Shown here in pieces: positions 1 to 63,753 of a stretch of 64,000 nt of DNA. The notes below the pieces were generated by a model. That model did not search any database. It worked only from the letters and a program-made list of their open reading frames with translations, and was not told the origin of the DNA. The position numbers were made by a program, and so were the translations under genes. Each line of letters begins with the position of its first letter. Position 1 is the stretch's first letter. Origin of the DNA: Macrostomum lignano (lineage: Eukaryota); contig NIVC01000900.1 in the NCBI GenBank assembly GCA_002269645.1, positions 1 to 64,000 on the forward strand, read 5' to 3'.

Positions 1-66
1 GAGTTTGGCGTCGAATATTTCACCTTCAATGTACTTCCTAAACGTTGTTATCGTTGCTAATTTCAG

Positions 67-853
67 GCCTCCACCAGCTACCCCGTCAACTCTCCAGCCC
101 CGCCGCCCTACACTCCGAGTTCGAGCGGCCCACCGTACGGCGGCGGAGGTCCCGGCGGTCCAGGCGCTCCCTACGGCGCTCCGTACGGTGGCGCCCCTAC
201 GGCGCTCCTTACGGCGGTGCCCCCTACGGTGGTCCGCCATACGGAGGCCCCGGTGGTCCGGCGGTCCCGGCGGCCCAGCGCCTTACCCCGGCGGCCATGG
301 CGGTCCTGGAGGCCCTGGCGGTCCACCGCCAATCGGTTTCAACATTGGCGGCGGTCCCGGTGGTCCTCCAATGCCTCCGGGTTCTTCCGGCGGCTATCCC
401 GGACCGCACCATAGCGGCCCGCCGCCTCCGCCGCCGCCGACCTACGCTGGGCCGGGGGTTCCGGCCCGGTTATTACGGAGCGCCACCAGGCGGCGGCGCT
501 GTGGGCTACCCGATGCAGCCGTACCAGCAGCAGCCGCGCTACCCTCAAGCAGCTGGTGGAGCTGCAGCCTATCCCTACGGCCATCCGCCGCAGCAGCAGT
601 ATCAGCAATACCCACAGCAGCCGGGCGGCGTTGTTGTTGTTAAACAGAAAAAGAAGAAGAACAAAGGAATGCGCAATGCTGCGGTAGGCTTGGCTGCCGG
701 AGCGGCTGGAGCCTATGTTGCGCATCGCGCGTTGGCGGCTGGGGTCACGGCATGGGCTGGGGCCATGGGATGGGTTGGCGACATGGCTCCTGGTCTTCGC
801 TGAGCAGCTGGGGCAGCTGTGGCAGTTTCAGCAGCTTTGGAAGTTTTGATTAA
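67..853 (+). CDS. Terminal exon of a Gly/Pro/Tyr-rich low-complexity protein; reading frame broken by four small indels
   Basis: Acceptor tttcag at 61-66. The GP/PPY-rich peptide passes through successive frames (ASTSYPVNSPAPPPYTP..., PYGAPYGGAPYGG..., GGPAPYPGGHGG..., GFRPGYYGAPP...KKKKNKGMRNAAVGLAAGAAGAY..., GGWGHGMGWGHGMGWRHGSWSSLSSWGSCGSFSSFGSFD*). Shifts near 198, 258, 458 and 732; stop TAA 851-853. Upstream exon(s) lie outside the window. Confidence 0.65.
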
Positions 854-12484: not shown

Positions 12485-15400
12485 ATGGTTGGCAGCTGCA
12501 CTAACTTCGACTCTGTAGAAGACGAGAAGAGTTCACATCGTCAGGATTTAAGCACGCTATCAGACTCTGCTGCCAATGAAGAGCTGTCTTCTAAAGCTAC
12601 CGATAATGATGCTACTGCAACGGAAAATATGGATGCTGAAGCCGGCTCTAATGCCAATACAGTCTCCGGTTTTGATTCTCCAACAGCCGAAGGATCCAGT
12701 GATGGAGATACATCGATAGAATCTTCCTTAATCTCTGTCCCAGCCTCCGTGTTGCCTTCTCCATCCTCTTCATCATCTTCGACAGCATCATCAACTGCTT
12801 CTACATCGAAACAGTCGTTAGTGACATTTCCGAATAGTTTAGATTGTAGCTCTGTAGGGCCAGAGTCTCATGAAGACCAGGCTCTGTTCGATGTGATTAT
12901 CATTGGTGCCGGAGTGTCCGGTTTAGCGGCTGCTCAGATGCTGCACAAAGCCGGTCTGAGATGCGTTGTACTCGAGGCTCGAGATCGGATTGGTGGCAGG
13001 ATTCACACTATCGAACTGCCAGCTAGCGCAGAGCACGGTCTGCCATCCGTTTCAGTTGATTTGGGTGCCAACTATTTGCATGGCTGCTCAAATTCTCAGC
13101 TGGAACAGCCGCTGTTTCATTTGGCTAGGTGGGTGATGTGCGGGTCTTGTAGTTGATTACTTCATTGGTTAGCTCTGTAAATAAATATTCGCTGGGTTGG
13201 TTTGTGGGTTTTCGGTTACGTCTTCCTATCACCCGGCGCTGAAACAATTCCGTCCATTTCTTAGACTCCTGTCGTGTGATTCAAAACCCATGAGAGCCAA
13301 CCCACAAGGCACAAAGAGGGTAATTTGCCTGACAGGAGTGGAAATTCAAAGGCCGCTCTGTACACCCCATATGAGCAGCGGGGCACATGGGGGACATGCT
13401 CCCAGTAAAAGGTATGGGGGGCATGCCTTTGCTTTGGCTCCATAGCCCCACCTCGACCTCACCTTGTGACCCGTTGTGGAAGTTGAAATTTTGCTTCAGG
13501 GCGCCAAAATATAGCGCTGTCAGCGCTAAAGTATGTTTTTAGCGCTAAAATGAGTGCCTGCGGCGCCAAAATAAATGCCTGCGGGGCTAAAATGAGTGCC
13601 TGCGGCGCCAAAATAAATGCCTGTGGCGCCAAAATGAGTGCCTGCAGCGCTAAAATGAGTGCCTGCGGTGCCAAAATGAGTGCCAGCAGCGCTAAAATGA
13701 GTGCCTGCAGCGCCAAAATGAGTGCCTGCGGCGCCAAAATGAGTGCCTGCGGCGCCAAAATGAGTGCCTGCAGCGCCAAAATGAGTGCCTGCAGCGCTAA
13801 AATGAGTGCCTGCAGCGCCAAAATGAGTGCCTGCGGCGCCAAAATGAGTGCCTGCGGCGCCAAAATGAGTGCCTGCAGCGCTAAAATGAGTGCCTGCAGC
13901 GCTAAAATGAGTGCCTGCGGCGCCAAAATGAGTGCCTGCGGCGCCAAAATGAGTGCCTGCAGCGCCAAAATGAGTGCCTGCAGCGCCAAAATGAGTGCCT
14001 GCAGCGCTAAAATGAGTGCCTGCAGCGCCAAAATGAGTGCCTGCGGCGCCAAAATGAGTGCCCGCGGTGCCAAAATGAGTGCCTGCAGCGCCAAAATGAG
14101 TGCCTGCAGCGCTAAAATGAGTGCCTGCAGCGCCAAAATGAGTGCCTGCGGCGCCAAAATGAGTGCCCGCGGCGCCAAAATGAGTGCCTGCGGCGCCAAA
14201 ATGAGTGCCTGCGGCGCCAAAATGACTTACTGCGGCGCCAAAATGAGTGCCTGCGGCGCCAAAATGAGTTACTGCGGCGCCAAAATGAGTGCTAACAACA
14301 CTTATGTTCGTATTTCCAAAATAGTTGTAGGAATATAGTCGTGTGTGGAATACTTGGCTTTGTCCTCAATATTTCATCAATTTTACATTTTAACAATCAA
14401 TCCACAGGCATTTAAAAGTGCAAACCTGCGTAGCCCCAGCCGATCTGGGCGACAAATATCGCGGCTGGGAGTCAGCCGAAGTGGCCGTCTGGCGAGATTT
14501 GGACAGTGGCAATGAGATTCCATTGGAAACTGTGGCTGATGTCTGCTTTCTGTTTGATCAGTGCCTGATGCACTGCTTGGCCTCGGTTAGGAGGCTGAGA
14601 AATCCCGCTTGGGTGCCGCTACAGTCCGTGTTTCGCGCTTCGACTCGGTGAGTTCTGAACGTTTTTTTAGGATGTAGTGTTCTATTCAGTCATGATCTTC
14701 AGATCTTAATGCTGGCACCCATTTTACAGCTGGGTGAACTGAAGCAATGCATAGTTAGGTGTCTTACTCAAGGACACAAATTGTTCCGAGTGGGTCAGGA
14801 ATCGAACCCCCGACCTTTCAGTTGTGAGTCCGCCGCTCTCACCACTAGGCTACAACCCCTTACCTATCTATCTACCTACCTACCTATCTGCCTACCTGCG
14901 TATCTCCCTACCTATCCACTTACCTATCTACCTACCGATCTACCTATCTACCTGCCTGTCTACCTACCTGCGTATCTACCTATCGATCTACCTACGTGTC
15001 CATCTACCTACCTCTCTGTCTACCTACCTACCTACCTATCTACCTACCTACCTACCTATCTACCTACCTACCTACCTATCGACCTACCTACGTAACTACG
15101 TAACTACTACCTCCTTACATATCTGCTTACCTACCTACCTACCTAACTACCTAATAGGTGCCCATATTGCCGCCAATGGTGTGCAATCTACGAGGGGTTA
15201 AAGAGATGAATATATACTACACATTATATGATAGCTTTACCTTTCTCCATAAGGTAGACAAATAGAAATTGTTTTATCAAGTGCTCCCAATTGCATTTGA
15301 ATTTAAGATCATTTTTAATTTAAGAAATTTAATAACATTTCATATCTATAACTTTGTAAGTTACCTGATTTCAGCGCCATACTAAAGATGCACTGTCAAA

Positions 15401-34900: not shown

Positions 34901-37405
34901 CTCCCATTCTCTCCCTTGTGTGCCTCTCCCATTCTCTCCCTTGTGTGCCTCTCCCATTCTCTCCCTTGTGTGCCTCTCCCATTCTCTCCCTTGTGTGCCT
35001 CTCCCTTGTGTGCCTCTCCCATTCTCTCCCTTGTGTGCCTCTCCCTTGTGTGCCTCTCCCCTTCTCTCCCTTGTGTGCCTCTCCCTTGTGTGCCTCTCCC
35101 CCTTCTCTCCCTTGTGTGCCTCTCCCCTTCTCTCCCTTGTGTGCCTCTCCCTTGTGTGCCTCTCCCATTCTCTCCGTTCTGTGCCTCTCCCATTCTCTCC
35201 CTTGTGTGCCTCTCCCCTTTCTCTCCCTTGTGTGCCTCTCCCATTCTCTCCCTTGTGTGCCTCTCCCATTCTCTCCCTTGTGTGCCTCTCCCATTCTCTC
35301 CCTTGTGTGCCTCTCCCCTTTCTCTCCCTTGTGTGCCTCTCCCATTCTCTCCCTTGTGTGCCTCTCCCCTTTCTCTCCCTTGTGTGCCTCTCCCTTTCTC
35401 TCCCTTGTGTGCCTCTCCCCTTTCTCTCCCTTGTGTGCCTCTCCCCTTTCTCTCCCTTGTGTGCCTCTCCCATTCTCTCCCCTGTGTGCCTCTCTTCCTT
35501 CTCTCCCTTGTGTGACTCTCCCCTTTCTCTTCCTTGTGTGCCTCTCTTCCTTCTCTCCCTTGTGTGCCTCTCTTCCTTCTCTCCCTTGTGTGACTCTCCC
35601 CTTTCTCTCCCTTGTGTGCCTCTCCCATTCTCTCCCTTGTGTGCCTCTCCCCTTCTCTCCCCTGTGTGCCTCTCCCCTTCTCTTTCTGTGTGCCTCTCCC
35701 CTTCTCATATTCTCCCTCTCTCTCTCCCTCTCTCTCCATTATTTCCCTTTACCCTATATCATTTCTGCCATGCCTCCTTTTCACATCAAATTTTTCTCAT
35801 ATTGCTTTTTGTCAGCAGCAACTTTGTGGCGGCTTGTCCAGATCAATAGAAATCATTTAGTATTTTTATTTCATACATTTAAAGAAACTTCGAAATTCTT
35901 TCTTCAAATTCTTGCTTTGAAACGCATTTGTAAATCGTTAGTTTAGTCAATCGAATTTTGTTCCGCAATTGCCGTCTCAGAACTGACAGCTGTGGATATC
36001 AAATCCATTATGATCTGATCTAAAAAGACTTTGATTTATTGGCAGCACAAACAGTTTCAATCGTTTTTCCTTTTTTCTTGTCTCTCATCTGATCTAATCT
36101 AATCTCACTGTGTCTTTCATCTGATCTAATCTAATCTCACTGTGTCTTTCATCTGATCTAATCTAATCTCAGTGTGTCTGTCATCTGATCTAATCTAATC
36201 TCACTGTGTCTCTCAACTGATCTAATCTAATCTCACTGTGTCTCTCAACTGATCTAATCTAATCTCACTGTGTTTCTCATCTGATCTAATCTAATCTCAC
36301 TGTGTCTCTCAACTGATCTAATCTAATCTCACTGTGTTTCTCATCTGATCTAATCTAATATTGCTGTGTCTGTCATCTGATCTAATCTAATCTCACTGTG
36401 TCTCTCATCTGATCTAATCTAATCTCACTGTCTCTCATCTGATCTAGTCTAATATCACTGTGTCTCTCATTTAATCGAATCTAATCTCACTGCCTTTCTT
36501 ATATGATCTAATCTAATCTCACCGTGTCTCATCAGATCTAATCTAATATCACTGTGTCTCTCAACTGATATGATCTAATCTCACTGCGTCTGTTATCTAA
36601 CCAAATCTAATCTTACTGTCTTTCTTATCTGATCGAACCTAATCTTACTGTGTCTCTCATCTGGTTTAATCTAATCTCACTGTGTCTCTCATCTGGTCTA
36701 ATCTAATCTCACCTCGTCTCTCATCTGATCTAATCTAATCTCTCTCGCCCGCAGTGCCCGAGCGAAACTATCAGGCCAAACCAGCAAAGTCTCCCAGAAA
36801 AACAGCAAGAATCAAAACCAGAATCATGGCCTGAGTCTAATCATTTACTCAGCGCACGACTCAACAGTGGCCTCGCTAGCCTCAGCACTGGACCTGGAGT
36901 TGCCAAGCTGGGCTTTGTGCCTCCGCCTTCGGCCCTGCTCGCCATGGAGGTGTACAGCGATGCCACGGTTCGCTTTGCTTATAATAACTCCACGAAATAC
37001 CGGCCGGTCCTGTTGAAGCCACCAGCTTGCGGTCAGTCGGATTGCCAGCTAGAGAAAATGCTGCCAGCTCAGTTCCCATCGCTTGGCGCTGTCAATCTGG
37101 CTTATGAATGCCGCAGCGAAGATAGCGCCGGGCCTACCGGTGTTAAAGCGCCAGTTGTACTTTTATTATTGCTAATTGCGTGCGTCTGTCTTATGTGCAC
37201 GGTGCTGCTGTTTGGCAAGAGATTCCGTCGTAGGTGCTTCAGTATTCGAGGCAGGTCCGGCTCGGCTGCGATTTCTAATCGATCAGGGACTGGTGCTGGC
37301 CGACGACAGGGCGGTGAGTATGCCTATAAACCGCTGATCAACTCCGCCGGTGAGGCTGACTGCGATGATGAAGACGCCGAGATGAATGAGAATGCTCGAT
37401 TGTAA
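28946..37405 (+). CDS. Histidine acid phosphatase 2 (lysosomal acid phosphatase-like), about 495 aa; exons 28946-29269, 30049-30233, 33479-33805, 36755-37405; one 1-nt deletion at about 36915
   Basis: Signal peptide, RHGIRNP, YSTDTDRTLASCQAFLLGLFP, G|YTCP, YSAHD, TM helix, YKPL in the tail. Intron phases 0, 2, 2 match. Spliced length 1487 nt (one short of a codon multiple); frame switches between SWA and VPPPSALLAMEVY. Confidence 0.85.
29330..29960. repeat. 27/31-bp minisatellite GCTGGGCAGCCAGCCTCCCAGATCCTCAGTT, phosphatase 2 intron 1
   Basis: Direct reading. Confidence 0.92.
30315..32360. repeat. 20-bp minisatellite CCAGATGATTATTGAGAGTG, phosphatase 2 intron 2
   Basis: About 100 copies. 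Confidence 0.95.
32755..33455. repeat. 25/29-bp minisatellite CCCTGAGATTCGCCCTAGAATCTCA, phosphatase 2 intron 2
   Basis: Direct reading; runs up to the acceptor region. Confidence 0.9.
33880..35700. repeat. 25-bp minisatellite CTCCCTTGTGTGCCTCTCCCATTCT, phosphatase 2 intron 3
   Basis: Direct reading; explains six long repetitive ORFs. Confidence 0.95.
36085..36745. repeat. 32-bp minisatellite TCTGATCTAATCTAATCTCACTGTGTCTCTCA, array 1
   Basis: Direct reading; same unit at 39595-40560. Confidence 0.92.
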
Positions 37406-37539: not shown

Positions 37540-37844
37540 TGACGTCATCTCTTTTTTGATGATGACGTCATAAGTTGAAGTTGTGACGTCATTTGTTAAA
37601 GTAATGACGTCATATCATAGTCATATGCAATATCATAATCACGACGTCATAAGTTAAATTTCTGGCGTCGTTTGTTAAAATTATGACGTCATTAGCTGTT
37701 CATACGATGACGTCATTTTTGAAGTAATGACGTCATTAGGTAAAGTAAAAACGGTATAACTTAAAAAATGACGTCATTTAATTAAAGTATTCATTGAACG
37801 TCATTTGTTAAAGCGAAACTATGACGCTGAAGCTTATGACGTCA
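37540..37844. promoter_or_regulatory. Cluster of nine perfect TGACGTCA (CRE-type) palindromes
   Basis: At 37540, 37563, 37584, 37605, 37684, 37708, 37728, 37768, 37837; regulatory function not shown. Confidence 0.4.
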
Positions 37845-38509
37845 TTACTTTATTTAATAATAACTTCATTATTTTCTATATTGTATTCCAATTAATAAAT
37901 ATATAACTGTTAGTTATTAGCTTTTTACATCAGTTTTGTATTATACGCATGACGCTTTACATCGGCATGAATAACTATGAACTTTGCCAATCCAGAAGTT
38001 CCAGTCGTGCTTTAATCAGATTTTTTCAGTTTCCAAAAAAACATTCATTCCACTGCGCGTACAAAAGCAATGCTTATTTGTGTTGTATGGAACAAATACA
38101 ATTTTGAATCTTAATTGCTATTTTTTCATTGATTATTGCATTGATAAAACAATTAGAAAACAACTTTTAGAATTTTAACTTGTTTAATAGTCTTTTATTA
38201 TCTGGTTTTGTAGGATGAGATTTGTCGGAAATTAAAGCATAATTAACGATTTAGTTTTTAGGATTAAACTGTCTTAATATATATATAATTTGTAAGTTTA
38301 CGTCAACCCTATTTAATCAAAAAATCTTGCATGAACTTTCTTTTCAGTTTGTAAGCTAATAGTTTTCATTTTCTGTTTGCATTCGATAATTAATGTGCTG
38401 TGCCAGAAGTCTTCCTTCTGAGAGTTTATCGAGACATTTGCTAATTTAAAAATAAACCAACCTAATTACATGTAAATGGCCTTAGTTCTTTGGTTTTTAT
38501 GGTCATTTC

Positions 38510-38744: not shown

Positions 38745-39594
38745 ATTTGTCATGACACACATCAACGTTAGCAATTGGCTGCATCTTATGAGTTCCATGG
38801 TATATTTGAACAATTTAAAATTTTATAATGGCACAGCAAACTTGGAAAATCTAGCGCTGGCAAAAGAAAGTGTCTCTGTGAAAGTAGCAAACGATTTTTT
38901 TTGCTATCTTGGCTTCTTGGACAAAAAACAGCTATCGTGTTCGGACAAAAAAGATCGATATATAGCTACCTTTCTTGGACCAAATCCGTGGTGTCTGCCT
39001 TGCCTGCCTGAGTACGAGGTGAAAAATTAATGTTACAAAAGGTGCGCCCCTCCCTGTTCAGCGTGTGAAACTTGAAACGTGTTTCCCTTGTACGTTTCGC
39101 TCGCCTACTTTTTGCCTTTCCTTTCGCTTCTGCTCTGCAGTCGATGAATCGATCTCCGAGGTAATGCACTTCTCCGTGTTTCTGGAGGAAGACAGGCCCT
39201 CAATTCAAGGAACCTTGCATTCAGACAGAGTTAGAAGAAGAAGAAGTGGCTCTTTGATGCTGCAATGAGCCTTTCTGTCTCTTGTTTGAAGCTATTGGCC
39301 TCTAGAGTCGCTCGCTCATTGTCTCACGAGCTGTTCTGTGAAAGACAAGAGCCAAGGACAGACAGCGGCAGACACAAGCCTGCTGCTGCAACAGACGTCA
39401 AGATGTGCTGGCATATTTTCATTGTCCAAGCTGTGCTTAATTGTTGCATTCCAATTGCTTCCAGGCTGCCTACTGTATAGCTACAATATTGCTGGTTCCT
39501 TACGCTGGGTGGTCTTAACGAGCTGTATAATTATCAGGAAGTGCCGGTTTTGCACTTTACACCGAGTCATTTTGTTTTTGTTTCAGCTCTTACT

Positions 39595-40560
39595 GATCTG
39601 ATCTGATCTCATCGTGTCTCACATCTGATCTAATCTAATCTCACTGTGTCTCGCATCTGATCTGATCTAATCTCACTGTGTCTCTCATCTGATCTAATCT
39701 AATCTCACTGTGTCTCATCTGATCTAATCTAATCTTACTGTGTCTCTCATCTGATCTAATCTAATCTCACTGTGTCTCGCATCTGATCTGTTCTAATCTC
39801 ACTGTGTCTCTCATCTGATCTAATCTAATCTCACTGTGTCTCATCTGATCTAATCTAATCTTACTGTGTCTCTCATCTGATCTAATCTAATCTCACTGTG
39901 TCTCGCATCTGATCTGTTCTAATCTCACTGTGTCTCTCATCTGATCTAATCTAGTCTCACCGTGTCTCACATCTGATCTAATCTAATCTCACTGTGTCTC
40001 TCATCTGATCTAATCTAATCTCATCGTGTCTCACATCTGATCTAATCTAATCTCACTGTGTCTCGCATCTGATCTGTTCTAATCTCACTGTATCTCTCAT
40101 CTGATCTAATCTCACTGTGTTTCGCATCTGATCTGATATAAACTCACTGTCTCATATCTGATATAATCTCATTGTGTCTCATCTGATCTGTTCTAATCTC
40201 ACCGTGTCTCGCGTCTGATCTGATCTAATCTCGCCATGTCTCATATCTGATCTAATCTCGCCATGTCTCATATCTGATCTAATCTCATTGTGTCTCATCT
40301 GATCTGTTCTAATCTAATCTCACTGTGTCTCACTTCTGGTTTAATGTAATTCACAGTGTCTCACATCTGATCTGATCTAATCTCGTCATGTCTCATATCT
40401 GATCTGATCTGATCTCGTCATGTCTCATATCTGATCTAATCTAATTTTATCGTGTCTCTCATCTGATCTGATATAATCTCATTTTGTCTCTTAAATCTCA
40501 CCATGTTGTACAGCTGATCTAATCTAATCTCACTACGTTCCGCATCTGAATAAATCTAAT
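39595..40560. repeat. 32-bp minisatellite, array 2 (same family as 36085-36745)
   Basis: Direct reading; degenerates toward the right end. Confidence 0.92.
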
Positions 40561-41184
40561 CCGTCTACTTCCAATCTGTCTATAGCTGCAATATATTGCA
40601 GGTTTATTGATAGTTAAACAAAAGAACTATACACTCAGAATCGCTTATAGATGCTGTATATTGTTAACTGATCCCTTGCAGCTGATTTCACCGTGTCCCA
40701 ATGTAAGGCTTGGTGTTTGGTGTAGAGTTGCTACTCCAAATTCTGTTTTAAAGTCTCCTTGTGAAGGCCTCTTAAATTGACAGCTGGCTTGCTTTCTCGT
40801 CACCGATCATCTCAGGCAGCTCATTGTCTTATTAGTGACTGTGAATGTCTTACTTTCTCCCTATTAGCCTAGACACTCCGTGCAAGCGGTTACAGTGTAA
40901 AAGTACTTCTGCGACGGATGCTGAAGAGTTTCTGGCTGTCTCAGGCTTTAGTGTTGGAAATTTTACATGCACTTTTTAATTATCTTGGAGCTAATTAGAG
41001 ATTTTAGTTGAGTCCAATCAATTTTCCACTACAACAGTATTTATTAATTGGCATCGTTAAATATCGTGACTATTTTAACGAGACTTGTTGAAGATTTATG
41101 CAAAATAAGATAAACACCATCGGACAAAGAAAGGCCGGTTACAAGATTAGATAGACAAACAGGTAGATAGAAAGACACTGGTAG

Positions 41185-42127
41185 ACAGATGCCTACAACC
41201 ATTGCAAGATGACACAAGAACATGCCTACAACCATAGGGAGAAGACACAAGGACATGCCTACAACCATAGAGAGAAGACACAAGGACATGCCTACAACCA
41301 TAGAGAGAAGACACAAGGACATGCCTACAACCATAGAGAGAAGACACAAGGACATACCTACAACCATAGAGAGAAGACACAAGTACATGCCTACAACCAT
41401 AGAGAGAAGACACAAGGACATGCCTACAACCATAGAGAGAAGACACAAGGACATGCTTAAGAGAGAAGACACAAGGACATGCCTACAACCAGAGAAGACA
41501 CAAGGACATGCCTACAACCATAGATAGAAGACACAAGGACATGCCGCTTGTACAACCATAGAGAGAAGACACAAGGACATGCCTAAGAGAGAAGACACAA
41601 GGACATGCCTACAACCATAGAGAGAAGACACAAGGACATGCTTAAGAGAGAAGACACAAGGACATGCCTACAACCAGAGAAGACACAAGGACATGCCTAC
41701 AACCATAGATAGAAGACACAAGGACATGCCGCTTGTACAACCATAGAGAGAAGACACAAGGACATGCCTAAGAGAGAAGACACAAGGACATGCCTACAAC
41801 CATAGAGAGAAGACACAAGAACATGCCTACAACCATAGGGAGAAGACACAAGAACATGCCTACAACCATAGAGAGAAGACACAAGAACATGCCTACAACC
41901 ATAGGGAGAAGACACAAGAACATGCCTACAACCATAGAGAGAAGACACAAGGACATGCCGCTTGTACAACCATAGAGAGAAGACACAAGGACATGCTTAA
42001 GAGAGAAGACACAAGGACATGCCTACAACCATAGAGAGAAGACACAAGAACATGCCTACAACCATAGAGAGAAGACACAAGGACATGCCTACAACCATAG
42101 GGAGAAGACACAAGAACATGCCTACAA
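41185..42127. repeat. 33-bp minisatellite GACATGCCTACAACCATAGAGAGAAGACACAAG
   Basis: Direct reading. Confidence 0.93.
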
Positions 42128-43792: not shown

Positions 43793-44249
43793 ATGGCAAT
43801 GGAAATCACTGAGAATCTGCTCTGCTCGCTGATACCAAAATGCAACAATAGCATTTATAACTCGAGTTCAACGGTGACTCAAAGCTCCGCTTACTCGCCT
43901 ATGCCGAGGTCAGAATGCTTTTTCTGTCGCCTATTTTACCTGGTAGTTACTCCGCTGATAGTGCTGCTGGGCTGTATTGGCAATGCGCTCTGCATCAAAG
44001 TGTTTACCAGACGAAGGTTCCAAAACCAAAGTGCCAGCGTGTACTTTGCCTGTCTGTCCGGAGCAGACCTGCTCGTGCTAATCTTCTACGTCATTCCGGA
44101 GTGGCTGGCCAAGCAGAACTTCCTGCCGACTGCCGCTAAGTCTTGGCTGGATCTGCAGATCATGTGCCAGAGCCTGCTGTTCTTCTCCTATTCGTTTAGA
44201 ATGGTGTCGGTCTGGATGCTCGTGACGTCAACGGTGGAGCGGTACATCG
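43793..44249 (+). CDS. Class A (rhodopsin-like) peptide GPCR, coding exon 1 (TM1-TM3)
   Basis: TM1 LLGCIGNALCIKVF, TM2 SASVYFACLSGADLL, TM3 CQSLLFFSYSFRMVSVWMLVTSTVERYI; phase-1 donor G|GTAAGT at 44249/44250. Confidence 0.9.
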
Positions 44250-44284
44250 GTAAGTTGCTGGTCATGGATGGCCTTGTCTGCTTA

Positions 44285-45510
44285 TCAGCTGTCCATTGAT
44301 GTTTTATGTCAGCTATCCATTGGCGTCTTTTATCCGCTATCCATTGGCGTCTTTTATCCGCTATCCATTGGCGTCTTTTATCCGCTATCCATTGGCGTCT
44401 TTTATCCGCTATCCATTGGCGTCTTTTATCCGCTATCCATTGGCGTCTTTTATCCGCTATCCATTGGCGTCTTTTATCCGCTATCCATTGGCGTCTTTTA
44501 TCCGCTATCCATTGGCGTCTTTTATCCGCTATCCATTGGCGTCTTTTATCCGCTATCCATTGGCGTCTTTTATCCGCTATCCATTGGCGTCTTTTATCCG
44601 CTATCCATTGGCGTCTTTTATCCGCTATCCATTGGCGTCTTTTATCCGCTATCCATTGGCGTCTTTTATCCGCTATCCATTGGCGTCTTTTATCCGCTAT
44701 CCATTGGCGTCTTTTATCCGCTATCCATTGGCGTCTTTTATCCGCTATCCATTGGCGTCTTTTATCCGCTATCCATTGGCGTCTTATCAGCTATCCATTG
44801 GCGTCTTATTAGCTATCCATTGGCGTCGTATTAGCTATCCATGGGCGTCTTATCAGCTATCCATTGGCGTCTTATCAGCTATCCATTGGCGTCTTTTATC
44901 CGCTATCCATTGGCGTCTTTTATCCGCTATCCATTGGCGTCTTTTATCCGCTATCCATTGGCGTCTTTTATCCGCTATCCATTGGCGTCTTTTATCCGCT
45001 ATCCATTGGCGTCTTTTATCCGCTATCCATTGGCGTCTTTTATCCGCTATCCATTGGCGTCTTTTATCCGCTATCCATTGGCGTCTTATCAGCTATCCAT
45101 TGGCGTCTTATTAGCTATCCATTGGCGTCGTATTAGCTATCCATGGGCGTCTTATCAGCTATCCATTGGCGTCTTATCAGCTATCCATTGGCGTCTTTTA
45201 TCCGCTATCCATTGGCGTCTTTTATCCGCTATCCATTGGCGTCTTTTATCCGCTATCCATTGGCGTCTTTTATCCGCTATCCATTGGCGTCTTTTATCCG
45301 CTATCCATTGGCGTCTTTTATCCGCTATCCATTGGCGTCTTTTATCCGCTATCCATTGGCGTCTTATCAGCTATCCATTGGCGTCTTATCAGCTATCCAT
45401 AATGTCTTATATCAGCTATCCATTGGCGTCTTATCAGCTATCCATAATGTCTTATATCAGCTATCCATTGGCGTCTTATCAGCTATCCATAAATGTCTTA
45501 TCAGCTATCC
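44285..45510. repeat. 24-bp minisatellite GCTATCCATTGGCGTCTTTTATCC, GPCR intron
   Basis: Direct reading. Confidence 0.95.
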
Positions 45511-46223
45511 TTGGAAACAGGATCCTAAAGTAGCATCCTTGACGCAGTTACCTTTAGACAGTCAAGTAGTGAAACAGCATAAAGTATTTATAAACTTTAC
45601 TAAAACGAACTAAAATAAATTAATCAGCAAATAGCAAATCTTTACAATTACTCACATTCAAGTCAGTCTCACAAAAAACTTTAATTTCCCAAATGGACTT
45701 GATAATCTCGTGAGCTATTCGGCTTGGGAATTAACTAAACCAACTGCTCGTGCGCTCGAGTATGCTAGCCGTGACTGGTACACAGTCATAGCATAAACGA
45801 AGATCGAACAATCTGATGAAAGAAAGACAGGCATATGCGATGCTTCAGTCCGGCCTATCTATCCATCTGAGGCCGGGACTGACTGCTTGTGAATTTCTAA
45901 TCGTGTAGAAAATCGTTGCGTGACAACGAGATTCTCATGCCACACGGAGCACACTTAACAGATTTCGGAAAGGGATTGTTAATTTATACATTTTTTCGAG
46001 TGGGAACTGCAGATATGAAATGCAGAATCAGTCTGACTGGATAATCGAATACTCCTATAGGGTGTTCAGCCCTGGAGTAGATAAATCTAAAAATATTTCG
46101 ATTTTATCGGTTAGCATTGATTTATAAGCAACTGTCCATTGAAACTTGATTCAACATCTAAAGATGAAGCATTGGTGAAGCTTTCGATGTGTGATTTAAA
46201 TTTTTTGCAAGTGGACTTAGAAC

Positions 46224-46695
46224 AGCATCTTTGATGCAAACCCTTGATAAAGCATCCTTGATACGTGTAGGAACTATGTCATAGGAACTATATCGTAGGA
46301 ACTACGTCTTGGGAACTATGTCGTAGGAACTATGTCGTAGGAACTATGTCGTAGGAATTATGTTGTAGGAACTATGTCGCAGAAAATTTGTTGTAAGAAC
46401 TATGTCTTAGGAATTTGTGTTGTAGGAACTATGTCGTAGGAACTATGTCATAGGGAATTTGTTGTAAGAACTATGTCGTAGGAATTATGTCGTAGGGAAT
46501 TTGTTGTAGGAACTATGTCGTAGGAAATTTTGTTGTACGAACTATGTGTCGTAGGGAATTTGTTGTAGGAACTATGTCGTAGGAACTATGTCGTAGGGAA
46601 TTTGTTGTAGGAATTTTGTTGTAGGGAATTTGTTGTAGGAACTATGTCGTAGGAACTATGTCGTAGGAACTATGTCGTAGGAACTATATCGTAGG
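46224..46695. repeat. 14-bp minisatellite AGCATCCTTGATAC that switches to its complement TCGTAGGAACTATG at 46265
   Basis: Units at 46224-46264 read forward; from 46265 units are the base-by-base complement in unbroken 14-bp register. Confidence 0.9.
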
Positions 46696-47069
46696 GACCT
46701 TGTAGTGGGATTTATACGACACATTCCGAATATTTGTTCGGGGATTTGTAAAACGTCATATCGACCCTATGTAGTGACTAAGTTTAAAAAGGAGTCGTGT
46801 CTTCGACAAGTTGACAGTTTGTCTTGGAACTGCCTACCGGTGGTACCAGTCTTCAGACAAATTTTACGTCGTCTGTTGTTTTCTAGCTTCTGATAAAAAC
46901 ATGTGACCACGTAACCTAGGGGTGACCTGTCGTTTAGGGGAACTTCGAACCGAAAGTTGCGTCAGGGGTGCAGGTCCTTTGTATAAAAAAAGTTTCCTGT
47001 GAGCTGTAAACACAGGACCTTTTTCTTCGATTTGGTAGCGTTCATCCTTGTGTATTTGAACTTAAACGA

Positions 47070-48705
47070 ATTGTACGAATAGTCTCGATTTACTGTGTAC
47101 GAATAGTCTCGGTGTACTGTGTACGAATAGTCTCGGTTTACTGTGTACGAATAGTCTCGGTTTACTGTGTACGAATAGTCTCGGTTTACTGTGTACGAAA
47201 GTCTCGGTTTACTGTGTACGAATAGTCTCGGTTTACTGTGTACGAATAGTCTCGGTGTACTGTGTACGGATAGTCTAGGTGTACTGTGTACGAATAGTCA
47301 CGATTTACTGTGCACGAATAGTCTCGATTTACTGTGTACGGATAGTCTCGGTGTACTTTGTACGAATAGTCTCGGTGTACTGTGTACGGATAGTCTCGGT
47401 GTACTGTGTACGAATAGTCTCGATTTACTGTGCACGAATAGTCTCGATTTACTGTGTACGGATAGTCTCGGTGTACTGTGTACGAATAGTCTCGGTGTAC
47501 TGTGTACGAATAGTCTCGATTTACTGTGTACGGATAGTCTCGGTGTACTGTGTACGAATAGTCTCGGTGTACTGTGTACGGATAGTCTCGGTGTACTGTG
47601 TACGAATAGTCTCGGTGTACTGTGTACGAATAGTCTCGGTGTACTGTGTACGAATAGTCTCGGTGTACTGTGTACGAATAGTCTCGGTGTACTGTGTACG
47701 AATAGTCTCGATTTACTGTGTACGAATAGTCTCGGTGTACTGTGTACGGAATAGTCTCGATTTACTGTGTACGGATAGTCTCGGTTTACTGTGTACGAAT
47801 AGTCTCGGTTTACTGTGTACGAATAGTCTCGGTGTACTGTGTACGAATAGTCTCGATTTACTGTGTACGGATAGTCTCGGTTTACTGTGTACGAATAGTC
47901 TAGGTTTACTGTGTACGAATAGTCTCGGTGTACTGTGTACGAATAGTCTCGATTTACTGTGTACGAATAGTCTCGGTGTACTGTGTACGAATAGTCTCGA
48001 TTTACTGTGTACGAATAGTCTCGGTTTACTGTGTACGAATAGTCTCGGTGTTACTGTGTACGAATAGTCTCGGTTTACTGTGTACGAATAGTCTCGGTTT
48101 ACTGTGTACGAATAGTCTCGGTTTACTGTGTACGAATAGTCTCGGTGTACTGTGTACGAATAGTCTCGATTTACTGTGTACGAATAGTCTCGGTGTACTG
48201 TGTACGAATAGTCTCGGTGTACTGTGTACGAATAGTCTCGGTGTACAGTGTACTGTGTACGAATAGTCTCGGTGTACTGTGTACGAATAGTCTCGGTGTA
48301 CTGTGTACGAATAGTCTCGATTTACTGTGTACGAATAGTCTCGGTGTACTGTGTACGAATAGTCTCGATTTACTGTGTACGGATAGTCTCGGTTTACTGT
48401 GTACGAATAGTCTCGGTGTACTGTGTACGAATAGTCTCGTGTACTGTGTACGAATAGTCTCGGTTACTGTGTACGAATAGTCTCGGTTTACTGTGTACGA
48501 ATAGTCTCGGTTTACTGTGTACGAATAGTCTCGGTTTACTGTGTACGAATAGTCTCGGTGTACTGTGTACGAATAGTCTCGATTTACTGTGTACGAATAG
48601 TCTCGGTGTACTGTGTACGAATAGTCGATTTACTGTGTACGGATAGTCTCGGTTTACTGTGTACGAATAGTCTCGGTGTACTGTGTACGAATAGTCTGGG
48701 TTTAC
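47070..48705. repeat. 24-bp minisatellite TACTGTGTACGAATAGTCTCGGTG (inside the complemented block)
   Basis: Direct reading; the native unit would be ATGACACATGCTTATCAGAGCCAC. Confidence 0.95.
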
Positions 48706-49797
48706 TTTAAAACTCTCTTGATTCTCTTGATTTGTATGGTTATGAGCATCAATTGTCAGTAGTAATTGTATTACGCCGAGCTTTTGAACTGTGACGTTTA
48801 TTAAAGATAGCGGGTCTCCGAGCCTGTGTAGAACACTGAAGTTTGTAACGGACTCCGAACTTGCTTATACATTTAATATTTGCTGACCGAATTAGGGACC
48901 TTGCACTGTTTGGGTCCAGTTGATTCCCAACCAAGACAAACTGTCCTCTTTTTTGAGTTAAGTGAGGAGCAATCGAAGCTCCGAAAGAGCGCGACAATAC
49001 GTCGGAATCAATGGATGTTACGTAACTAAAGTGCGTGCTATACTCTATGTCGATCCCTATAGGTTATAGTCTTACAATATTTGAGCCGAAATCGACTCCT
49101 CTAAAGTGCGTATCTAGGCTCGGAATAGTTAAGGAAAGGTGCTGTTCTTTAAGCGACTGTTTTTGTGCCATTCTACCATTTTTCTGCCATTGAGTTAGTC
49201 GTTCAACCGATTTAAAATGAGCTACATATACGACTGTTCGATGTACCTGTTCCGTCACCACTCTCCGAGACAATCTCTGCGCTTTACGCTTAGACAGACA
49301 ATGAATAACTGACTTGGAGAAGAACGTGTCCTGAGAACATCTATCTTATCTTAGAACTGGTTAATTACGCACACCTTAAACTTCCATTGGGTATCGATCG
49401 GAATACCAAAACATCGTAGAGTTCTTATAGATGGAAAAGATCAGCAAACTGAGAAGAAAGCTAAGTTTCGATGTTTCGAAACAAGTAAAATTCTTAAAAG
49501 ACGAAGCTGCTACAGTTTTTGACCTAAATCATAAGATGTTTAGACTTTAAATTTTCGAAAATCCTGGGTGTCAGTGTACTACCAACAAATGGCAAGTTAT
49601 CTAATAGGGAATCTTGATTATCATAAATTAGGATAAGCTCAAAACAGTAAATTTCAAGACAACACCGTCCTAATGTCGAACGGGCTGAAGCGATTGCATC
49701 CAAAAGAAATGCTAAAAGCACGTCTTTTACGTCTCTAACGGTTACCAACTTTTAACTAGTTCGAGCCGAGACGATTGGCGTAAATTAGCGGGGAGTC

Positions 49798-50708
49798 CGC
49801 AGGCAGTGGGCTACGAAGCCGCGGCCTAGACATGTTTCGCGTCGCGGGCGGCGTAGTAGAAGTAGAACCAGTGGTTGTCGATGCGGGAGACGGATACCTT
49901 CGGCAAATACGTGCAGTGGGTCGCAAACTTGCGGTTGCAGTGGCGGACGAACGGCGCAGGGCCCCGGTTGCAACTCGACAAGCACGACCTGTGTCGGATA
50001 CGACGGGACGACTGGCAGTAGGGCAGGCGATAGTATAAGCAGAAGTTGCGCGACTAGCGAGCAGTGAACGACTAACAGGCGGCAAGAGCTAGCACGTGGT
50101 TAGTGCTGCAACAGCCCGTGGTCAAGCGGACAGACGATGACCAGCACAGCAGGTGAAAAGACGAGGACTGAACCGGGATGATAGACTAGACCTAACAGTC
50201 GAAACACCACTTCAAAGCGTAGGCGTGGCCGGACTGGCTGTCGATGGACTGTTAGCTGCCTCCACTGCCCTAATTCGTCCCGGTTATGCCGTCGCGGTAC
50301 TGGTAGTGCTTCTGGTAGATGATGGATTGAATGTCGCAGTTGAAGAAAGAGATAAGGATGCGATCGTGGATGAAGGCGTTCCTCTACTTCGCTTACAAGT
50401 GGCACTTCTACTTCGCCCTGTTCCGAGCGGCTAAGATAGTCGTACCGTCAGTCCTCCCGGGCTGCCTCGCCAAGTTGAAGTGGTACTCGGCCGGTTCGTC
50501 GCCGCCTAGGTGGATACGGCCCGACGAGCTGGCGATGTTCTTCTAGTGGTAGGCAGCCTACGGCTGGTACGCGTTCGGGTGGCTCAGCCGATAGTGGCCG
50601 CCGCCGCAGCCACCGCAGTCGCCGCAGTCGCAGAGGCCAGGGAGTAGCAGCAGCGTCCACCACCGTCGGGTCTACGTGTTGACGGCTCGCTAACTTCTTC
50701 GCTTAACT
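49798..50708. CDS. GPCR coding exon 2 (TM4-TM7 and tail), legible only in the non-reversed complement of the + strand; full receptor 455 aa
   Basis: Complement reads CCCTCAG|GC GTC CGT CAC CCG..., completing ERYI-G-VRHPMLRRRICTKRSARRIIFILVTNSYALCLWKPF...LDTAYAALLTVIPSAIIFVFNALIARHL...FACLLLVVSSTFLLLTWPYYL...YYLTYSVNFFLYSYASTYFRKEMKRMF...IEEAN*; 911 nt with no internal stop, TGA at 50706-50708, AATAAA just after. Confidence 0.93.
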
Positions 50709-51687
50709 TAGTTATTATTTAGTTTATTAACGCCTTTTAAAAAACTAAGCCCACTCGGTAAGCCAAAAGTAGTGCGTCTAACTCAGTTCAAATTTAATTG
50801 TTTTAGAAAAGGCAGTAATTGCTTAATCAACTTGATAGCTCAATAAAACACAAAAACAAAGATATAACTGCTCACAAAATGGTCAAATAAACTAACGAGA
50901 ATGTAAAATTTTGTAGGACTCTCAACATTTGAACAAACATACATCAACCCTCTGAGCTTGAACAAATATAAAGTTTAGAAACGTCGGTGTATAGCGCTAA
51001 TTCTAGCTTTCGACGTAACCTTGAAGCTAACAAGAAACATTGGTTTGTGTGTTATTTTAGACTTCAATTAGCGCATATAAATGGTATAAATGAAGATATC
51101 ATCGTGAGACTAAGCCGATAATTGCAATAACAATTAACAATATTATATCGTGAACAAAATGATTAAAACCGTGAAGATTGTTGGGACAAATAGAACGCAT
51201 AAACGTGGACAATTTTTCGTCTCACGTGGTGGTGACTCTAATATTAACTCAGTTCCAATATGAACAAAACTTAACTGGCGTTGAGATAAATTTTTCACGT
51301 ATAACGGTGCGCAACGGCAAAAGATTCTTTTACATGTCTTAAAAAGGAGGTTGCTTGAAATGGCGAATACAAAACTAGACTTACATGCACATGACTTAAT
51401 ACGTGTTCAAAAGCTAAAAAAAGACGTGTAAAAACAAATACAACTTCTCATTAAAAAAGAACAAAAGAAAGGTGTCCGTGTATCGCAGCGATAACAAAAT
51501 TACACTTCAAGGGGTACAGTGTCGCTGCAGGTCATGCGTTCATGTTAATGTGAACTTACGTGGGGCAATAATCTACACCGTGAACACACGTCGCAGAAAA
51601 ACGTTGTTCAAAGTTAATATTTAATAATGATATTATTATTTGAATTGACGTTTGACGTGATATTTACAACCTTTCCAAGTAACCATT

Positions 51688-52049
51688 CCCCCCGGCATCG
51701 GGTCGCCAGATCGCGTCCGAGACCACAAGGTCGCTGGGTCCGAGCTAAGGTTCACGTCAGTGTAATTAAACCCCGACTTAACCTTAGAGACGAACCGAGA
51801 CAAGCACGTTAATTGCCGGAACTCTCGGTTGGGGGTTCCGCGTCACTTCACATGTACGGATTGCTATTTATTTCAATCCCGGCGACATGTGAGGAAACAC
51901 TCACACATGGACGCATGCATAGGAACGCGAACATACGGACGAGTCCCCTCAGCCGCCTTACCCGTCATTACGAGAGCGGCCAACACACGGTTACAGCGAA
52001 TTTCACGCGGTCCCACGTGTGTTGGGGGACGAAGATTATTTTTTTTATT
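51688..52049. mobile_element. SINE family B, full length with 15-bp TSDs, legible only in the non-reversed complement
   Basis: Complement reads GGGGGGCCGTAGCCCAGCGGTCTAGCG...GGCTCGATTCC...CTAATAAAAAAAATAAA; direct repeat TTTCCAAGTAACCAT at 51672-51686 and 52050-52064. Confidence 0.85.
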
Positions 52050-54489
52050 TTTCCAAGTAACCATGGTGACTTATTCATTAAATACATAGTCTCAACGAGT
52101 CGCAATGCTTTATAACCGATCTCACCCCCCCACACGCTAAGTGTGAACCGGGTTCTGTGTACATGTACGGACTGGATGGTTAGTTATTGTTAACGGTTCC
52201 GACTCGACGTTATTATAGTGCCGTCGTGTCGTTTAGGTACCTCCGTGCTGTTATCGAATATGTTATCTTTCTTAATGATGATGTCGATGATCGTACGAAT
52301 CTGCAACGAAAGTACGTTTCTGTTTTTTCGGTCGTCGTATGTGTACATCCGTGTCGCCCGGTGTGGGACCCACTTCGTAAATATATTAAGACTCTTCTAC
52401 TTTGTGTGAACTGCTCACTGCTCAATACGAGAGTCAGCGCATGCAGAGCGCTAACAGGTAGGTTGGCTGCTCATTCGCGTGGAACGGCCACGCAGATGGG
52501 AATGAGTGAGTTCTGCCTCACTCGCTCAAGCAGTTACTCTCTCGTTCCTATAATTCTCCCCATTTTCCGACATGCGGCCCTCCCCATTCCTGACGAATGC
52601 TTTTTGTTGCAGAAATTCTCTCTACAGTTTTTGTTAAAAAGCGATTTTCAAAAAAAATCACCTCAGGTAGAATTTCAAGGATGCACATTTCTTTTTTGTA
52701 AAAAATTCTATCTCATATTTTTGGTCATTCGATAATAAAAAAGTGTGGCGGACCTTGTCTGTCTTCCAAATGATCCCTACAGTATAATGGAAGCAACTCG
52801 CCCCCCTCGAGTGGATCTTCAGCTGCGGTACAAAAAAAGACATTGGCTGGCGCGAGATGCGGTGAGTAGGAAGGAACTTTTCAATAAAATAACCGACATA
52901 TGCGAAATTGAATTCATTAGAGAAAGAAGAAAAAATGTGCGCCGCTTTGAAATGACAAATTCAAATTTTAAATTAGCTACTTGAAATTTAAGTATTTTAA
53001 ATAAATTTGCTTTGTTATACTTTGTACGCCAGTCGTGTAGCACTGAGGGCTCATCATGATATACACCCAGTGCTGTTACAAAATTTACATATAATTATAG
53101 AGTATTTCTCTTTATTTCATAGTGTTTGATAAGCAAAAATTTATTTGCCATCCAAAACTAATAAATATAGAAAATTAAAAACCCAATACGGATAATATAA
53201 ATTTAATAACGATTCATTCAAAAGAATCAAATCAGTGATACGCGATCTGGTTTCCGCTGCCAAATGTTTAAAACAAACAGTTTAAAAAAATAAATAAGTA
53301 ATTTCCTTACGATTTTAACATTTTAAGGATATTTTTGAACACAAAGTGATTAATATCTAACCGTATAGCTGCACATTTAATGTAACTGTATATAATAACA
53401 GTATATTTCTATTCATGTTGTCGGATAATATCTGTGCGCCGATAGCTACAGCAATAATTCAGGATCCAATGCCAGAATAAAACTAAAAACACAAAAAACA
53501 CAGACTTGTAACAGAAACAAATAAATAATTAACTAAAAACTGTCCTAATTTCGTAAGACAATTCTCTTAACGTTAATTTTAGCCGCATATAACACGGGCT
53601 GATTTTGGCCAAACGTGCAAAATAACTGAGGAAATCAGTCACTTTGAACTAGCAATATATTGCTATCAATATTATTCAAACCATTAGGTTAATTTTTGTT
53701 TAATACAAACGTCACTCTTGACATAACTAAAAAGTTATCGAATCAGTTTTAAATTCTGGTCCAAGACTTTCCAATTCAAACAATCACACTTTTTAATATT
53801 GCTCATTGGTTTTAAAAATCGCATTCCAAGTGCAAGAAATCAACCTCTATCCATGATTAAAGAGTAATTATTCTCACCTATTCCGAACGCACTGGCCAAT
53901 ACAAAAAATCCTATTATCTATGCACAAATAATAGTTTAAGAAAGCCAAATAAAATAAAACTGCGGGGGCTTTTAACACAAATATTTGTTGTAACGAAGAC
54001 ATGGACTAAAACGTTGATTAAATCTTGTACGTCTACAAGTTAATAAAGATTAAAGGAAGGTATCTGGTATACGAGTGAACTTCGACCGTAGTCTGTACGA
54101 AATGCACAATAAATAATATATCGGTAAACGAGTGCAACACCAAAACTGAACAAGGGAATACAGAGAAGCATGAGGTTATGATGGAGTTGTTTTGAAGTTA
54201 TTCAGAAAGATTTGTTAGCTAAATATTCGCGGCAAATATCATGCATAACACCATGAAATTCAGCTCGCAATTCAAGACATTAATAAATATTGGTATTAAC
54301 AACAGATCGAACTTGGCCGATGTCCAAACACGTTAAAACAGAGCGTTTTTTCAGGGCACCTCATACCTACAGGCCTATTAAATAGGTAAACACCAGTGCA
54401 GCGAAACAGCGAAAATAAATTTATTGCAAAAATTGTACATGAATTGCTGTCAATATAAGTTTCTTAACTCCAATGCACACAATGCACAA

Positions 54490-56636: not shown

Positions 56637-63753
<7,117 letters not shown>

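What the first reader, a model, noticed from the sequence alone, without database searches (positions are those of the whole stretch)
46224..46334. Left breakpoint caught inside a tandem array that flips to its complement in register
Seen: AGCATCTTTGATGC, AAACCCTTGATAA and AGCATCCTTGATAC (to 46264) are followed directly by GTGTAGGAACTATG, TCATAGGAACTATA, TCGTAGGAACTACG, TCTTGGGAACTATG and TCGTAGGAACTATG. The last is the exact complement of AGCATCCTTGATAC; the reverse complement GTATCAAGGATGCT does not appear. The 14-bp phase is unbroken, so the block sits in its native position and order with only the base pairing swapped. This fixes the junction at 46264/46265 within about 2 bp.
Basis: seen in the sequence. 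Interest (0 to 1): 0.7.

Follow-up and report, generated by a model that had tools for sequence, protein, structure and literature searches.

The report
6-kb block stored as plain complement
About 6.1 kb of this animal genome window (46265 to about 52400) is written as the base-by-base complement without being reversed, a data-handling error rather than biology, and it hides the second half of a receptor gene.

Summary
Three 14-bp units at 46224-46264 are followed, in unbroken phase, by about 30 units that are their plain (unreversed) complement. The reverse complement occurs nowhere in the window.

A block from 46265 (within 2 bp) to about 52400 (within about 20 bp) is complemented in place. 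Five independent lines agree:
- Complementing the block extends the minisatellite from 30.4 to 33.6 copies across the junction.
- Di- to pentanucleotide asymmetries flip sign only inside the block, with sharp change points at about 46210 and 52400.
- The block as given has no BLASTN match to the rest of the window. Once complemented, it matches a dispersed repeat at 3394-3661 (E=4e-38).
- Only the complemented block encodes a GPCR exon. Its homologues are in Macrostomum lignano (E=2e-40) and Capitella teleta.
- That exon splices in frame, through a GTAAGT donor and a CAG acceptor, to a native exon 1 upstream of the breakpoint. The product is a 455-aa protein with one continuous 7tm_1 match (66 bits).

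No polymerase copies DNA in parallel orientation, so this is an artefact and not a biological feature. Whether it sits in the public record or was introduced later could not be determined.

The parts
46224..46264 (+). Native stub: the first three units (14, 13 and 14 bp) of a 14-bp minisatellite with true unit AGCATCCTTGATAC.
   Evidence: TRF on the restored sequence runs through these units (46222-46695, 33.6 copies).
46265..46695 (.). Rest of the same minisatellite (about 30 units), stored as plain complement (GTAGGAACTATGTC as given).
   Evidence: There are 21 near-exact copies in 14-bp register with the stub. Complemented, this stretch matches the stub at E=6.8e-10.
46265..52400 (.). The whole block written as base-wise complement without reversal, about 6136 bp. 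The left edge is fixed to within 2 bp and the right edge to within about 20 bp.
   Evidence: The cumulative log-likelihood ratio (native versus complemented k-mers) peaks at 46208-46212 and bottoms at 52398-52402 for k=2-5. With held-out training the block scores -15.4 per kb against +17.8 per kb outside. It is the strongest mirrored segment (63.3, next 14.4). Of 163 outside segments of equal size, none falls below +37, whereas the block scores -62.8.
47072..48706 (.). 24-bp minisatellite inside the block. The unit as given is TGTACGAATAGTCTCGGTTTACTG, so the true unit is its complement ACATGCTTATCAGAGCCAAATGAC.
   Evidence: TRF. It lies wholly within the complemented block and within the GPCR intron.
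43793..44249 (+). GPCR exon 1, native and outside the block. It runs from the ATG through TM1-TM3 to the ERY motif and ends at a GTAAGT donor.
   Evidence: Alone it matches Pfam 7tm_1 over profile positions 1-85 (30.4 bits).
49798..50708 (+). GPCR exon 2 (intracellular loop 2 to the C-terminus plus the stop codon). It is readable only after complementing the given bases, and it is preceded by the acceptor TTAATCGCCCCTCAG.
   Evidence: Alone it matches 7tm_1 over profile 77-228. The M. lignano homologue scores E=2.4e-40. tblastn gives E=5.6e-47 on the restored window against a best of 0.6 on the given window.
51691..51968 (.). Copy of a dispersed repeat of about 280 bp that looks tRNA-SINE-like by eye. 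Its partner is at 3394-3661 on the minus strand. The match appears only after complementing the block.
   Evidence: BLASTN: 72% identity over 296 bp, E=4e-38. There were 45 plain-reverse 13-mer pairs between 3000-4000 and 51500-52000.
52380..52420 (.). Right breakpoint of the complemented block, in unique sequence. No N run or repeat marks it.
   Evidence: V-shaped minimum of the cumulative log-likelihood ratio at 52398-52402 for k=2, 3, 4 and 5. Sequence read.

Best explanation
A contiguous block of the record, 46265 to about 52400, was replaced by its base-wise complement (A<->T, C<->G) without being reversed. The block stayed in its original position and order. This is a data-handling artefact: a 'complement' operation applied where either nothing or a reverse complement belonged, or a deliberate perturbation. 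It is not a property of the organism's DNA.

The true sequence is obtained by complementing the block in place. That restores one continuous 14-bp minisatellite across 46264/46265. It also restores a two-exon class-A GPCR gene: exon 1 at 43793-44249, a 5.5-kb intron full of minisatellites, and exon 2 at 49798-50708.

Shown: the complement relation, both breakpoints, the in-place order, and the hidden gene. Inferred: that the cause is software or human handling, and at which stage it happened.
For: 1. The array is continuous in 14-bp register only after complementation.
2. Strand-symmetric k-mer statistics are mirrored only inside the block, with sharp change points. In non-repeat sequence CG/GC is above 1 and (CA+TG)/(AC+GT) is below 1 only there.
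3. The block as given has 0 BLASTN HSPs against the remaining 58 kb on either strand. Complemented, it has 9-10, including a 296-bp dispersed repeat at E=4e-38.
4. The complemented block has a 316-codon open frame matching 7tm_1. It matches a Macrostomum lignano GPCR at E=2.4e-40 in a 5.8-billion-sequence database. tblastn gives E=5.6e-47 restored against 0.6 as given.
5. Native exon 1 plus complemented exon 2 join through GTAAGT...CCCCTCAG in frame, reading VERYI|GVRHPML. The product gives one 7tm_1 stretch over profile 1-228, at 66.4 bits against a 30.5 cut-off. It also gives a single colinear HSP with a Capitella teleta GPCR, E=3e-57, crossing the junction.
6. Outside the block the given sequence reads normally: PALP, amine-oxidase and fn3 exons, a U6atac gene and a tRNA-like element.
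7. From established knowledge: all known DNA and RNA polymerases synthesise antiparallel copies, so no biological process yields a parallel complement.
Against: No reads, AGP file or public record of the source could be reached, so the artefact is inferred from the sequence alone. The right breakpoint rests on statistics only (within about 20 bp), because no feature straddles it. There is no N run or other assembly scar at either junction of the kind a patching step often leaves.
Confidence: 0.97

Rival explanations
1. The block was plainly reversed (written 3'->5') rather than complemented. In that case the true block would be in the opposite order, with the GPCR exon on the minus strand.
For: Plain reversal and plain complementation give identical strand-symmetric k-mer statistics and the same readable content on one strand. 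therefore cannot separate the two.
Against: The array continues in exact 14-bp register across 46264/46265 only under in-place complementation. Under in-place complementation exon 2 lies downstream of exon 1 on the same strand, with matching donor, acceptor and frame, and the product is colinear with real GPCRs. Under reversal exon 2 would sit on the opposite strand from exon 1.
Confidence: 0.015
2. A genuine chromosomal inversion or strand-switch rearrangement with a breakpoint inside the minisatellite.
For: Minisatellites are fragile and often sit at rearrangement breakpoints (general knowledge). The window is 36% minisatellite.
Against: An inversion produces the reverse complement. GTATCAAGGATGCT and its near variants are absent. 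The block as given matches nothing in the window on either strand. No frame of the given block encodes the GPCR.
Confidence: 0.003
3. The left units and the right array are unrelated native sequences, and their complement relation is a coincidence or a natural mirror or parallel-complement repeat.
For: Short mirror-symmetric k-mers do occur in other simple arrays of this window, for example ATCTAATCTA in 36079-36742 and 39593-40490.
Against: Three consecutive units match in register (E=6.8e-10). The anomaly also extends over 6.1 kb of unique sequence, a gene and a dispersed repeat. Natural mirror repeats are short and mostly homopurine/homopyrimidine (general knowledge), and this unit is neither.
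Confidence: 0.002

Closest known systems
Orientation errors in sequence records (entries or segments deposited in the wrong orientation, or primers listed unreversed)
   Same: Both are errors of sequence bookkeeping rather than biology. Both are detected because genes, repeats and k-mer asymmetries make sense only after a formal string operation. One example of the genre is a published correction noting that two primers should have been reverse-complemented (PMC7758918, found).
   Different: The usual case is a whole entry left as its reverse complement, which is still valid DNA. Here only an internal 6.1-kb block is affected and the operation is complement without reversal. Neither strand of the given block therefore exists in the organism.
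Assembly misorientation or inversion misassembly
   Same: Both involve a discrete internal block with two breakpoints, one of them in a tandem repeat.
   Different: A misoriented contig is the reverse complement and would still give BLAST and protein hits on the other strand. This block gives none. There are no Ns at the junctions. The block's position and order are already correct, so this is not a failed attempt to fix a real inversion.
Mirror repeats, as found by 'parallel complement' searches (10.1101/2023.07.10.548352, listed; abstract line only, not read)
   Same: The stub and the array are related by the parallel-complement operation that such searches use.
   Different: Natural mirror repeats are short and symmetric about a centre. 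This is a 6.1-kb unidirectional relation that includes a coding exon.
Class-A (rhodopsin-family) G-protein-coupled receptors of spiralian animals (the gene hidden by the artefact)
   Same: Full 7tm_1 match at 66.4 bits. It has an ERY motif at the end of TM3 and NFFLY in TM7. It is 35% identical over 331 aligned positions to a Capitella teleta receptor and 50% identical to a Macrostomum lignano fragment.
   Different: No close orthologue (above 50% identity) is held in the protein collection. The ligand is unknown. There is an insertion of about 37 residues relative to the M. lignano fragment, which may reflect the fragment's incomplete gene model.

Membership tests
Plain-complement (unreversed) data artefact | Features that cross a junction become continuous, in register and in order, after base-wise complementation of the block in place. 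| tested here: met
   The 14-bp array extends from 30.4 to 33.6 copies. GPCR exon 1 (native) and exon 2 (complemented) join in frame with canonical splice sites and give one 7tm_1 stretch.
Plain-complement (unreversed) data artefact | Reversal-sensitive k-mer statistics (CG vs GC, TA vs AT, CA+TG vs AC+GT) are mirrored inside the block and normal outside. | tested here: met
   -15.4 per kb inside against +17.8 per kb outside with held-out training. No other segment comes close.
Plain-complement (unreversed) data artefact | Homology to proteins and dispersed repeats appears only after complementation. | tested here: met
Plain-complement (unreversed) data artefact | Raw reads or the assembly history contradict the record at the two junctions. 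| not testable with these tools
   No reads, AGP file or eukaryotic genome collection was available. Four exact-product look-ups found nothing.
Genuine inversion | The block is the reverse complement of its ancestral or native state, so content is readable on the opposite strand. | tested here: not met
   No minus-strand copy of the unit. No BLASTN or tblastn hit on either strand of the given block.
Natural mirror repeat (H-DNA type) | Short, centre-symmetric, usually a homopurine/homopyrimidine tract. | tested here: not met
   The unit AGCATCCTTGATAC is of mixed composition. The relation is a unidirectional parallel complement over 6.1 kb.
Rhodopsin-family GPCR (the restored gene) | Pfam 7tm_1 match above the gathering score covering the TM1-TM7 region. 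| tested here: met
   66.4 bits against a 30.5 cut-off, profile positions 1-228 of 260, residues 63-289. The TM7 region aligns to the Capitella receptor.
Rhodopsin-family GPCR (the restored gene) | E/DRY motif at the TM3 end and NPxxY in TM7. | tested here: inconclusive
   ERY is present (VERYIG). TM7 carries NFFLY rather than NPxxY, and the same variant is present in both homologues.
tRNA-derived SINE (the dispersed repeat) | tRNA-related head with A and B boxes, and many genomic copies. | not tested
   Only read by eye in the alignment (GGTCTAGCG... and GGCTCGATTC on the reverse strand). It did not reach Rfam's tRNA threshold. Only two copies were seen.

The most novel reading that the evidence does not exclude
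The sequence as given is physically real. On that reading, some unknown process copied 6.1 kb of chromosome in parallel rather than antiparallel orientation, destroying a GPCR gene very recently, because the restored exon 2 is still an intact 303-codon frame. A more modest version: the flip sits in a deposited public assembly and reflects a systematic pipeline bug that affects other loci as well.
Probability: 0.002. Interest if true: 0.95.

Novelty: not a real feature. Interest (0 to 1): 0.12.

Why it matters
Biologically it does not matter, because the flip is not a property of the organism. Practically it does.

- Neither strand of the given 6.1 kb exists in nature. Aligners, gene finders and repeat maskers will therefore all fail silently on it.
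- Half of a receptor gene and a dispersed-repeat copy are hidden.
- If the error is in a public record, the record should be corrected and the rest of the assembly screened.
- The screen used here is cheap, needs no reference, and found both breakpoints. It takes the log-likelihood ratio of strand-symmetric k-mers against their complements and follows the cumulative sum.

Tried and rejected
- Exact-product look-ups to find the source contigs all returned nothing on record. I tried the junction-spanning ORF 52187-52735, and the ORFs 45143-45613, 43793-44299 and 12485-13156.
- Two protein searches found only distant homologues (50% and 35% identity) and no hit near 100%. The source proteome is therefore not held, and the stage at which the flip arose could not be determined.
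- GC and AT skew of non-repeat sequence shows no usable contrast between the block and its flanks.
- ARAGORN finds no tRNA in the block in either form.
- No open frame or repeat straddles the right breakpoint informatively. The 129-codon minus-strand frame at 52084-52470 in the restored sequence looks non-coding.
- Literature searches for documented complement-without-reverse errors gave nothing specific.
- I did not scan the metagenome, prokaryotic-genome or viral collections, because the window is from an animal.

Full report
**The observation.** Three units, AGCATCTTTGATGC, AAACCCTTGATAA and AGCATCCTTGATAC (46224-46264), are followed directly by a 14-bp array. Its units (GTGTAGGAACTATG, TCATAGGAACTATA, TCGTAGGAACTACG, TCTTGGGAACTATG, TCGTAGGAACTATG and so on) are the base-wise complement of the left units, read in the same direction.

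- TRF calls the array 46267-46695 (30.4 copies).
- TCGTAGGAACTATG with up to 2 mismatches occurs 21 times, all on the + strand. The first eight copies are exactly 14 bp apart, starting at 46265, which is 46251 + 14. Shuffles give 0.49 matches on average.
- AGCATCCTTGATAC occurs only on the + strand, and its reverse complement is absent from the window.
- The complemented array matches the 41-nt stub at 92.9% identity, E=6.8e-10. The array as given does not match it.

**How far the anomaly extends.** Real double-stranded DNA obeys strand symmetry, but it is not symmetric under reversal. CG differs from GC, TA from AT, and CA+TG from AC+GT. A plain complement swaps each of these pairs.

- In non-repeat sequence, CG/GC is 0.5-0.8 and (CA+TG)/(AC+GT) is 1.1-1.5 across the window. 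Between about 46000 and 52500 these become 1.0-3.0 and 0.7-0.9.
- I trained a strand-symmetric k-mer model outside the region and scored the log-likelihood ratio of each k-mer against its complement. The sum is positive in every 1-kb bin that contains non-repeat sequence outside 46-53 kb except one (41001-42000, -3.4, mostly masked repeat), and negative in all seven bins inside.
- The cumulative sum peaks at 46208-46212, just before the masked array. It bottoms at 52399-52400 for k=2-4 and at 52398-52402 for k=2-5 in a finer scan showing a sharp V.
- With leave-chunk-out training, the strongest mirrored segment of the window is 46213-52400 (score 63.3). The next scores 14.4.
- The block scores -15.4 per kb against +17.8 per kb outside.
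- None of 163 outside segments of equal size falls below +37, whereas the block scores -62.8.

**Repeats.** BLASTN of the block as given against the other 58 kb, both strands, finds nothing, with or without the low-complexity filter. The complemented block finds the array stub and a 296-bp, 72%-identical dispersed repeat: 51691-51968 against 3661-3394, E=4e-38. The same pair appears as 45 plain-reverse 13-mer matches in a k-mer dot plot.

**Coding content.** The block as given has no convincing open frame outside its arrays and no Pfam hit. Complemented, it has a 316-codon frame on the + strand (49758-50705) that matches Pfam 7tm_1 (E=6.4e-7, profile 77-228).

- Against 5.8 billion proteins this frame hits a Macrostomum lignano GPCR fragment at E=2.4e-40 with 50% identity, including runs such as RHLLIVRRSRSC-NHDVVGHQFA.
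- tblastn of that protein gives E=5.6e-47 on the restored window. The best hit on the window as given is 0.6.

**In-place complement, not reversal.** Plain reversal would give the same statistics and the same readable content, so junction-spanning features have to decide between the two.

- The array is in exact register across 46264/46265 after in-place complementation. TRF then calls one array, 46222-46695, with 33.6 copies.
- A native open frame upstream of the block (43793-44249, + strand) encodes the missing front of the receptor: the N-terminus and TM1-TM3, ending in VERYI at a consensus GTAAGT donor.
- The complemented block offers the acceptor TTAATCGCCCCTCAG at 49797/49798.
- The join is in frame and gives a 455-aa protein reading ...VERYI|GVRHPMLRRR....
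- Exon 1 alone matches 7tm_1 positions 1-85 and exon 2 alone matches 77-228. The joined protein gives a single stretch over 1-228 at 66.4 bits (cut-off 30.5).
- The joined protein aligns in one colinear HSP (residues 46-354, E=3e-57) to residues 10-333 of a Capitella teleta GPCR, straight across the exon junction.

Exon 2 is therefore downstream of exon 1, on the same strand and in the right frame. That holds only if the block is complemented where it stands.

**Controls.** Outside the block the sequence as given reads normally.

- A PALP exon lies at 2983-3420 (+).
- An amine-oxidase exon lies at 12485-13156 (+).
- fn3 exons lie at 61068-61649 and 62984-63736 (-).
- A U6atac gene and a tRNA-like element are also present.

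It is the block that is wrong, not the rest of the window.

**Explanation.** All known polymerases make antiparallel copies (established knowledge). Inversions, template switches and fold-backs yield reverse complements, and none is present here. A parallel complement of 6.1 kb that carries an intact, spliceable exon can only be a string operation on the record.

The pre-flip order and orientation were already correct, so this is not a half-finished correction of a real inversion. The breakpoints fall at arbitrary places, one in the middle of a minisatellite and one in unique sequence, with no Ns. This is what a coordinate-based scripting slip or a deliberate perturbation would leave. I could not tell at which stage it happened. 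The source genome and its proteome are not in the collections I could reach.

**What the locus really is.** It is an animal locus, and its best protein relatives are spiralian (a flatworm and an annelid). The window is 36% minisatellite. It carries a two-exon class-A GPCR gene whose 5.5-kb intron holds three minisatellites. These are 44282-45490 (24-bp unit), 46224-46695 (14-bp unit) and 47072-48706 (24-bp unit). The artefact's left edge falls in the second of them.

**Verdict.** The feature is a data artefact, so its biological interest is low. Its practical value is as a quality-control catch and as a method for finding such blocks.

Noticed in passing
window 37540-37845: Nine copies of the palindrome TGACGTCA, mostly as ATGACGTCAT (a CRE/ATF-like site), lie within about 300 bp, just downstream of an open frame at 36734-37402. 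This cluster is the second most 'mirrored' segment in the k-mer scan (score 14.4). Its CG- and TA-rich palindromes explain that score, so it is not a second flip.
   Followed up: partly
window, whole (31 arrays, 23.3 kb): Minisatellites are extraordinarily dense. About 36% of the 64 kb is in 31 tandem arrays with periods from 2 to 56 bp, and most have unrelated units. Their origin and any relation between them were not studied.
   Followed up: no
window 62205-62303 (-): Rfam match to U6atac minor-spliceosomal snRNA: 48.6 bits against a gathering score of 33, covering the full model.
   Followed up: no
window 57374-57443 (-): tRNA-like element (Rfam tRNA, 37.1 bits) that ARAGORN does not call. 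It directly abuts the 20-bp array at 57448-57963. It may be a SINE head or a tRNA pseudogene seeding an array.
   Followed up: no
window 3394-3661 (-) and 51691-51968 (restored +): Two copies of a dispersed element of about 280 bp, 72% identical. One end looks tRNA-derived by eye (GGTCTAGCG... and GGCTCGATTC on the reverse strand). The left copy starts at the edge of a PALP-domain exon (2983-3420).
   Followed up: partly
window 45532-45545 (+): AGCATCCTTGACGC is a lone near-copy (2 mismatches) of the 14-bp minisatellite unit. It lies about 700 bp upstream of the array, in native orientation, just after the 24-bp array.
   Followed up: no
window 2983-3420 (+), 12485-13156 (+), 61068-61649 (-), 62984-63736 (-): Exons of other genes, all reading normally as given: a pyridoxal-phosphate enzyme (PALP), a flavin amine oxidase N-terminus, and two fibronectin type III exons.
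   Followed up: partly
window 1-830: A GC-rich stretch with 9-, 12-, 18- and 26-bp repeats (GGCGCTCCCTAC and similar) lies inside long open frames at 5-643 and 45-803 (+). It may encode a Gly/Pro/Tyr-rich repetitive protein.
   Followed up: no
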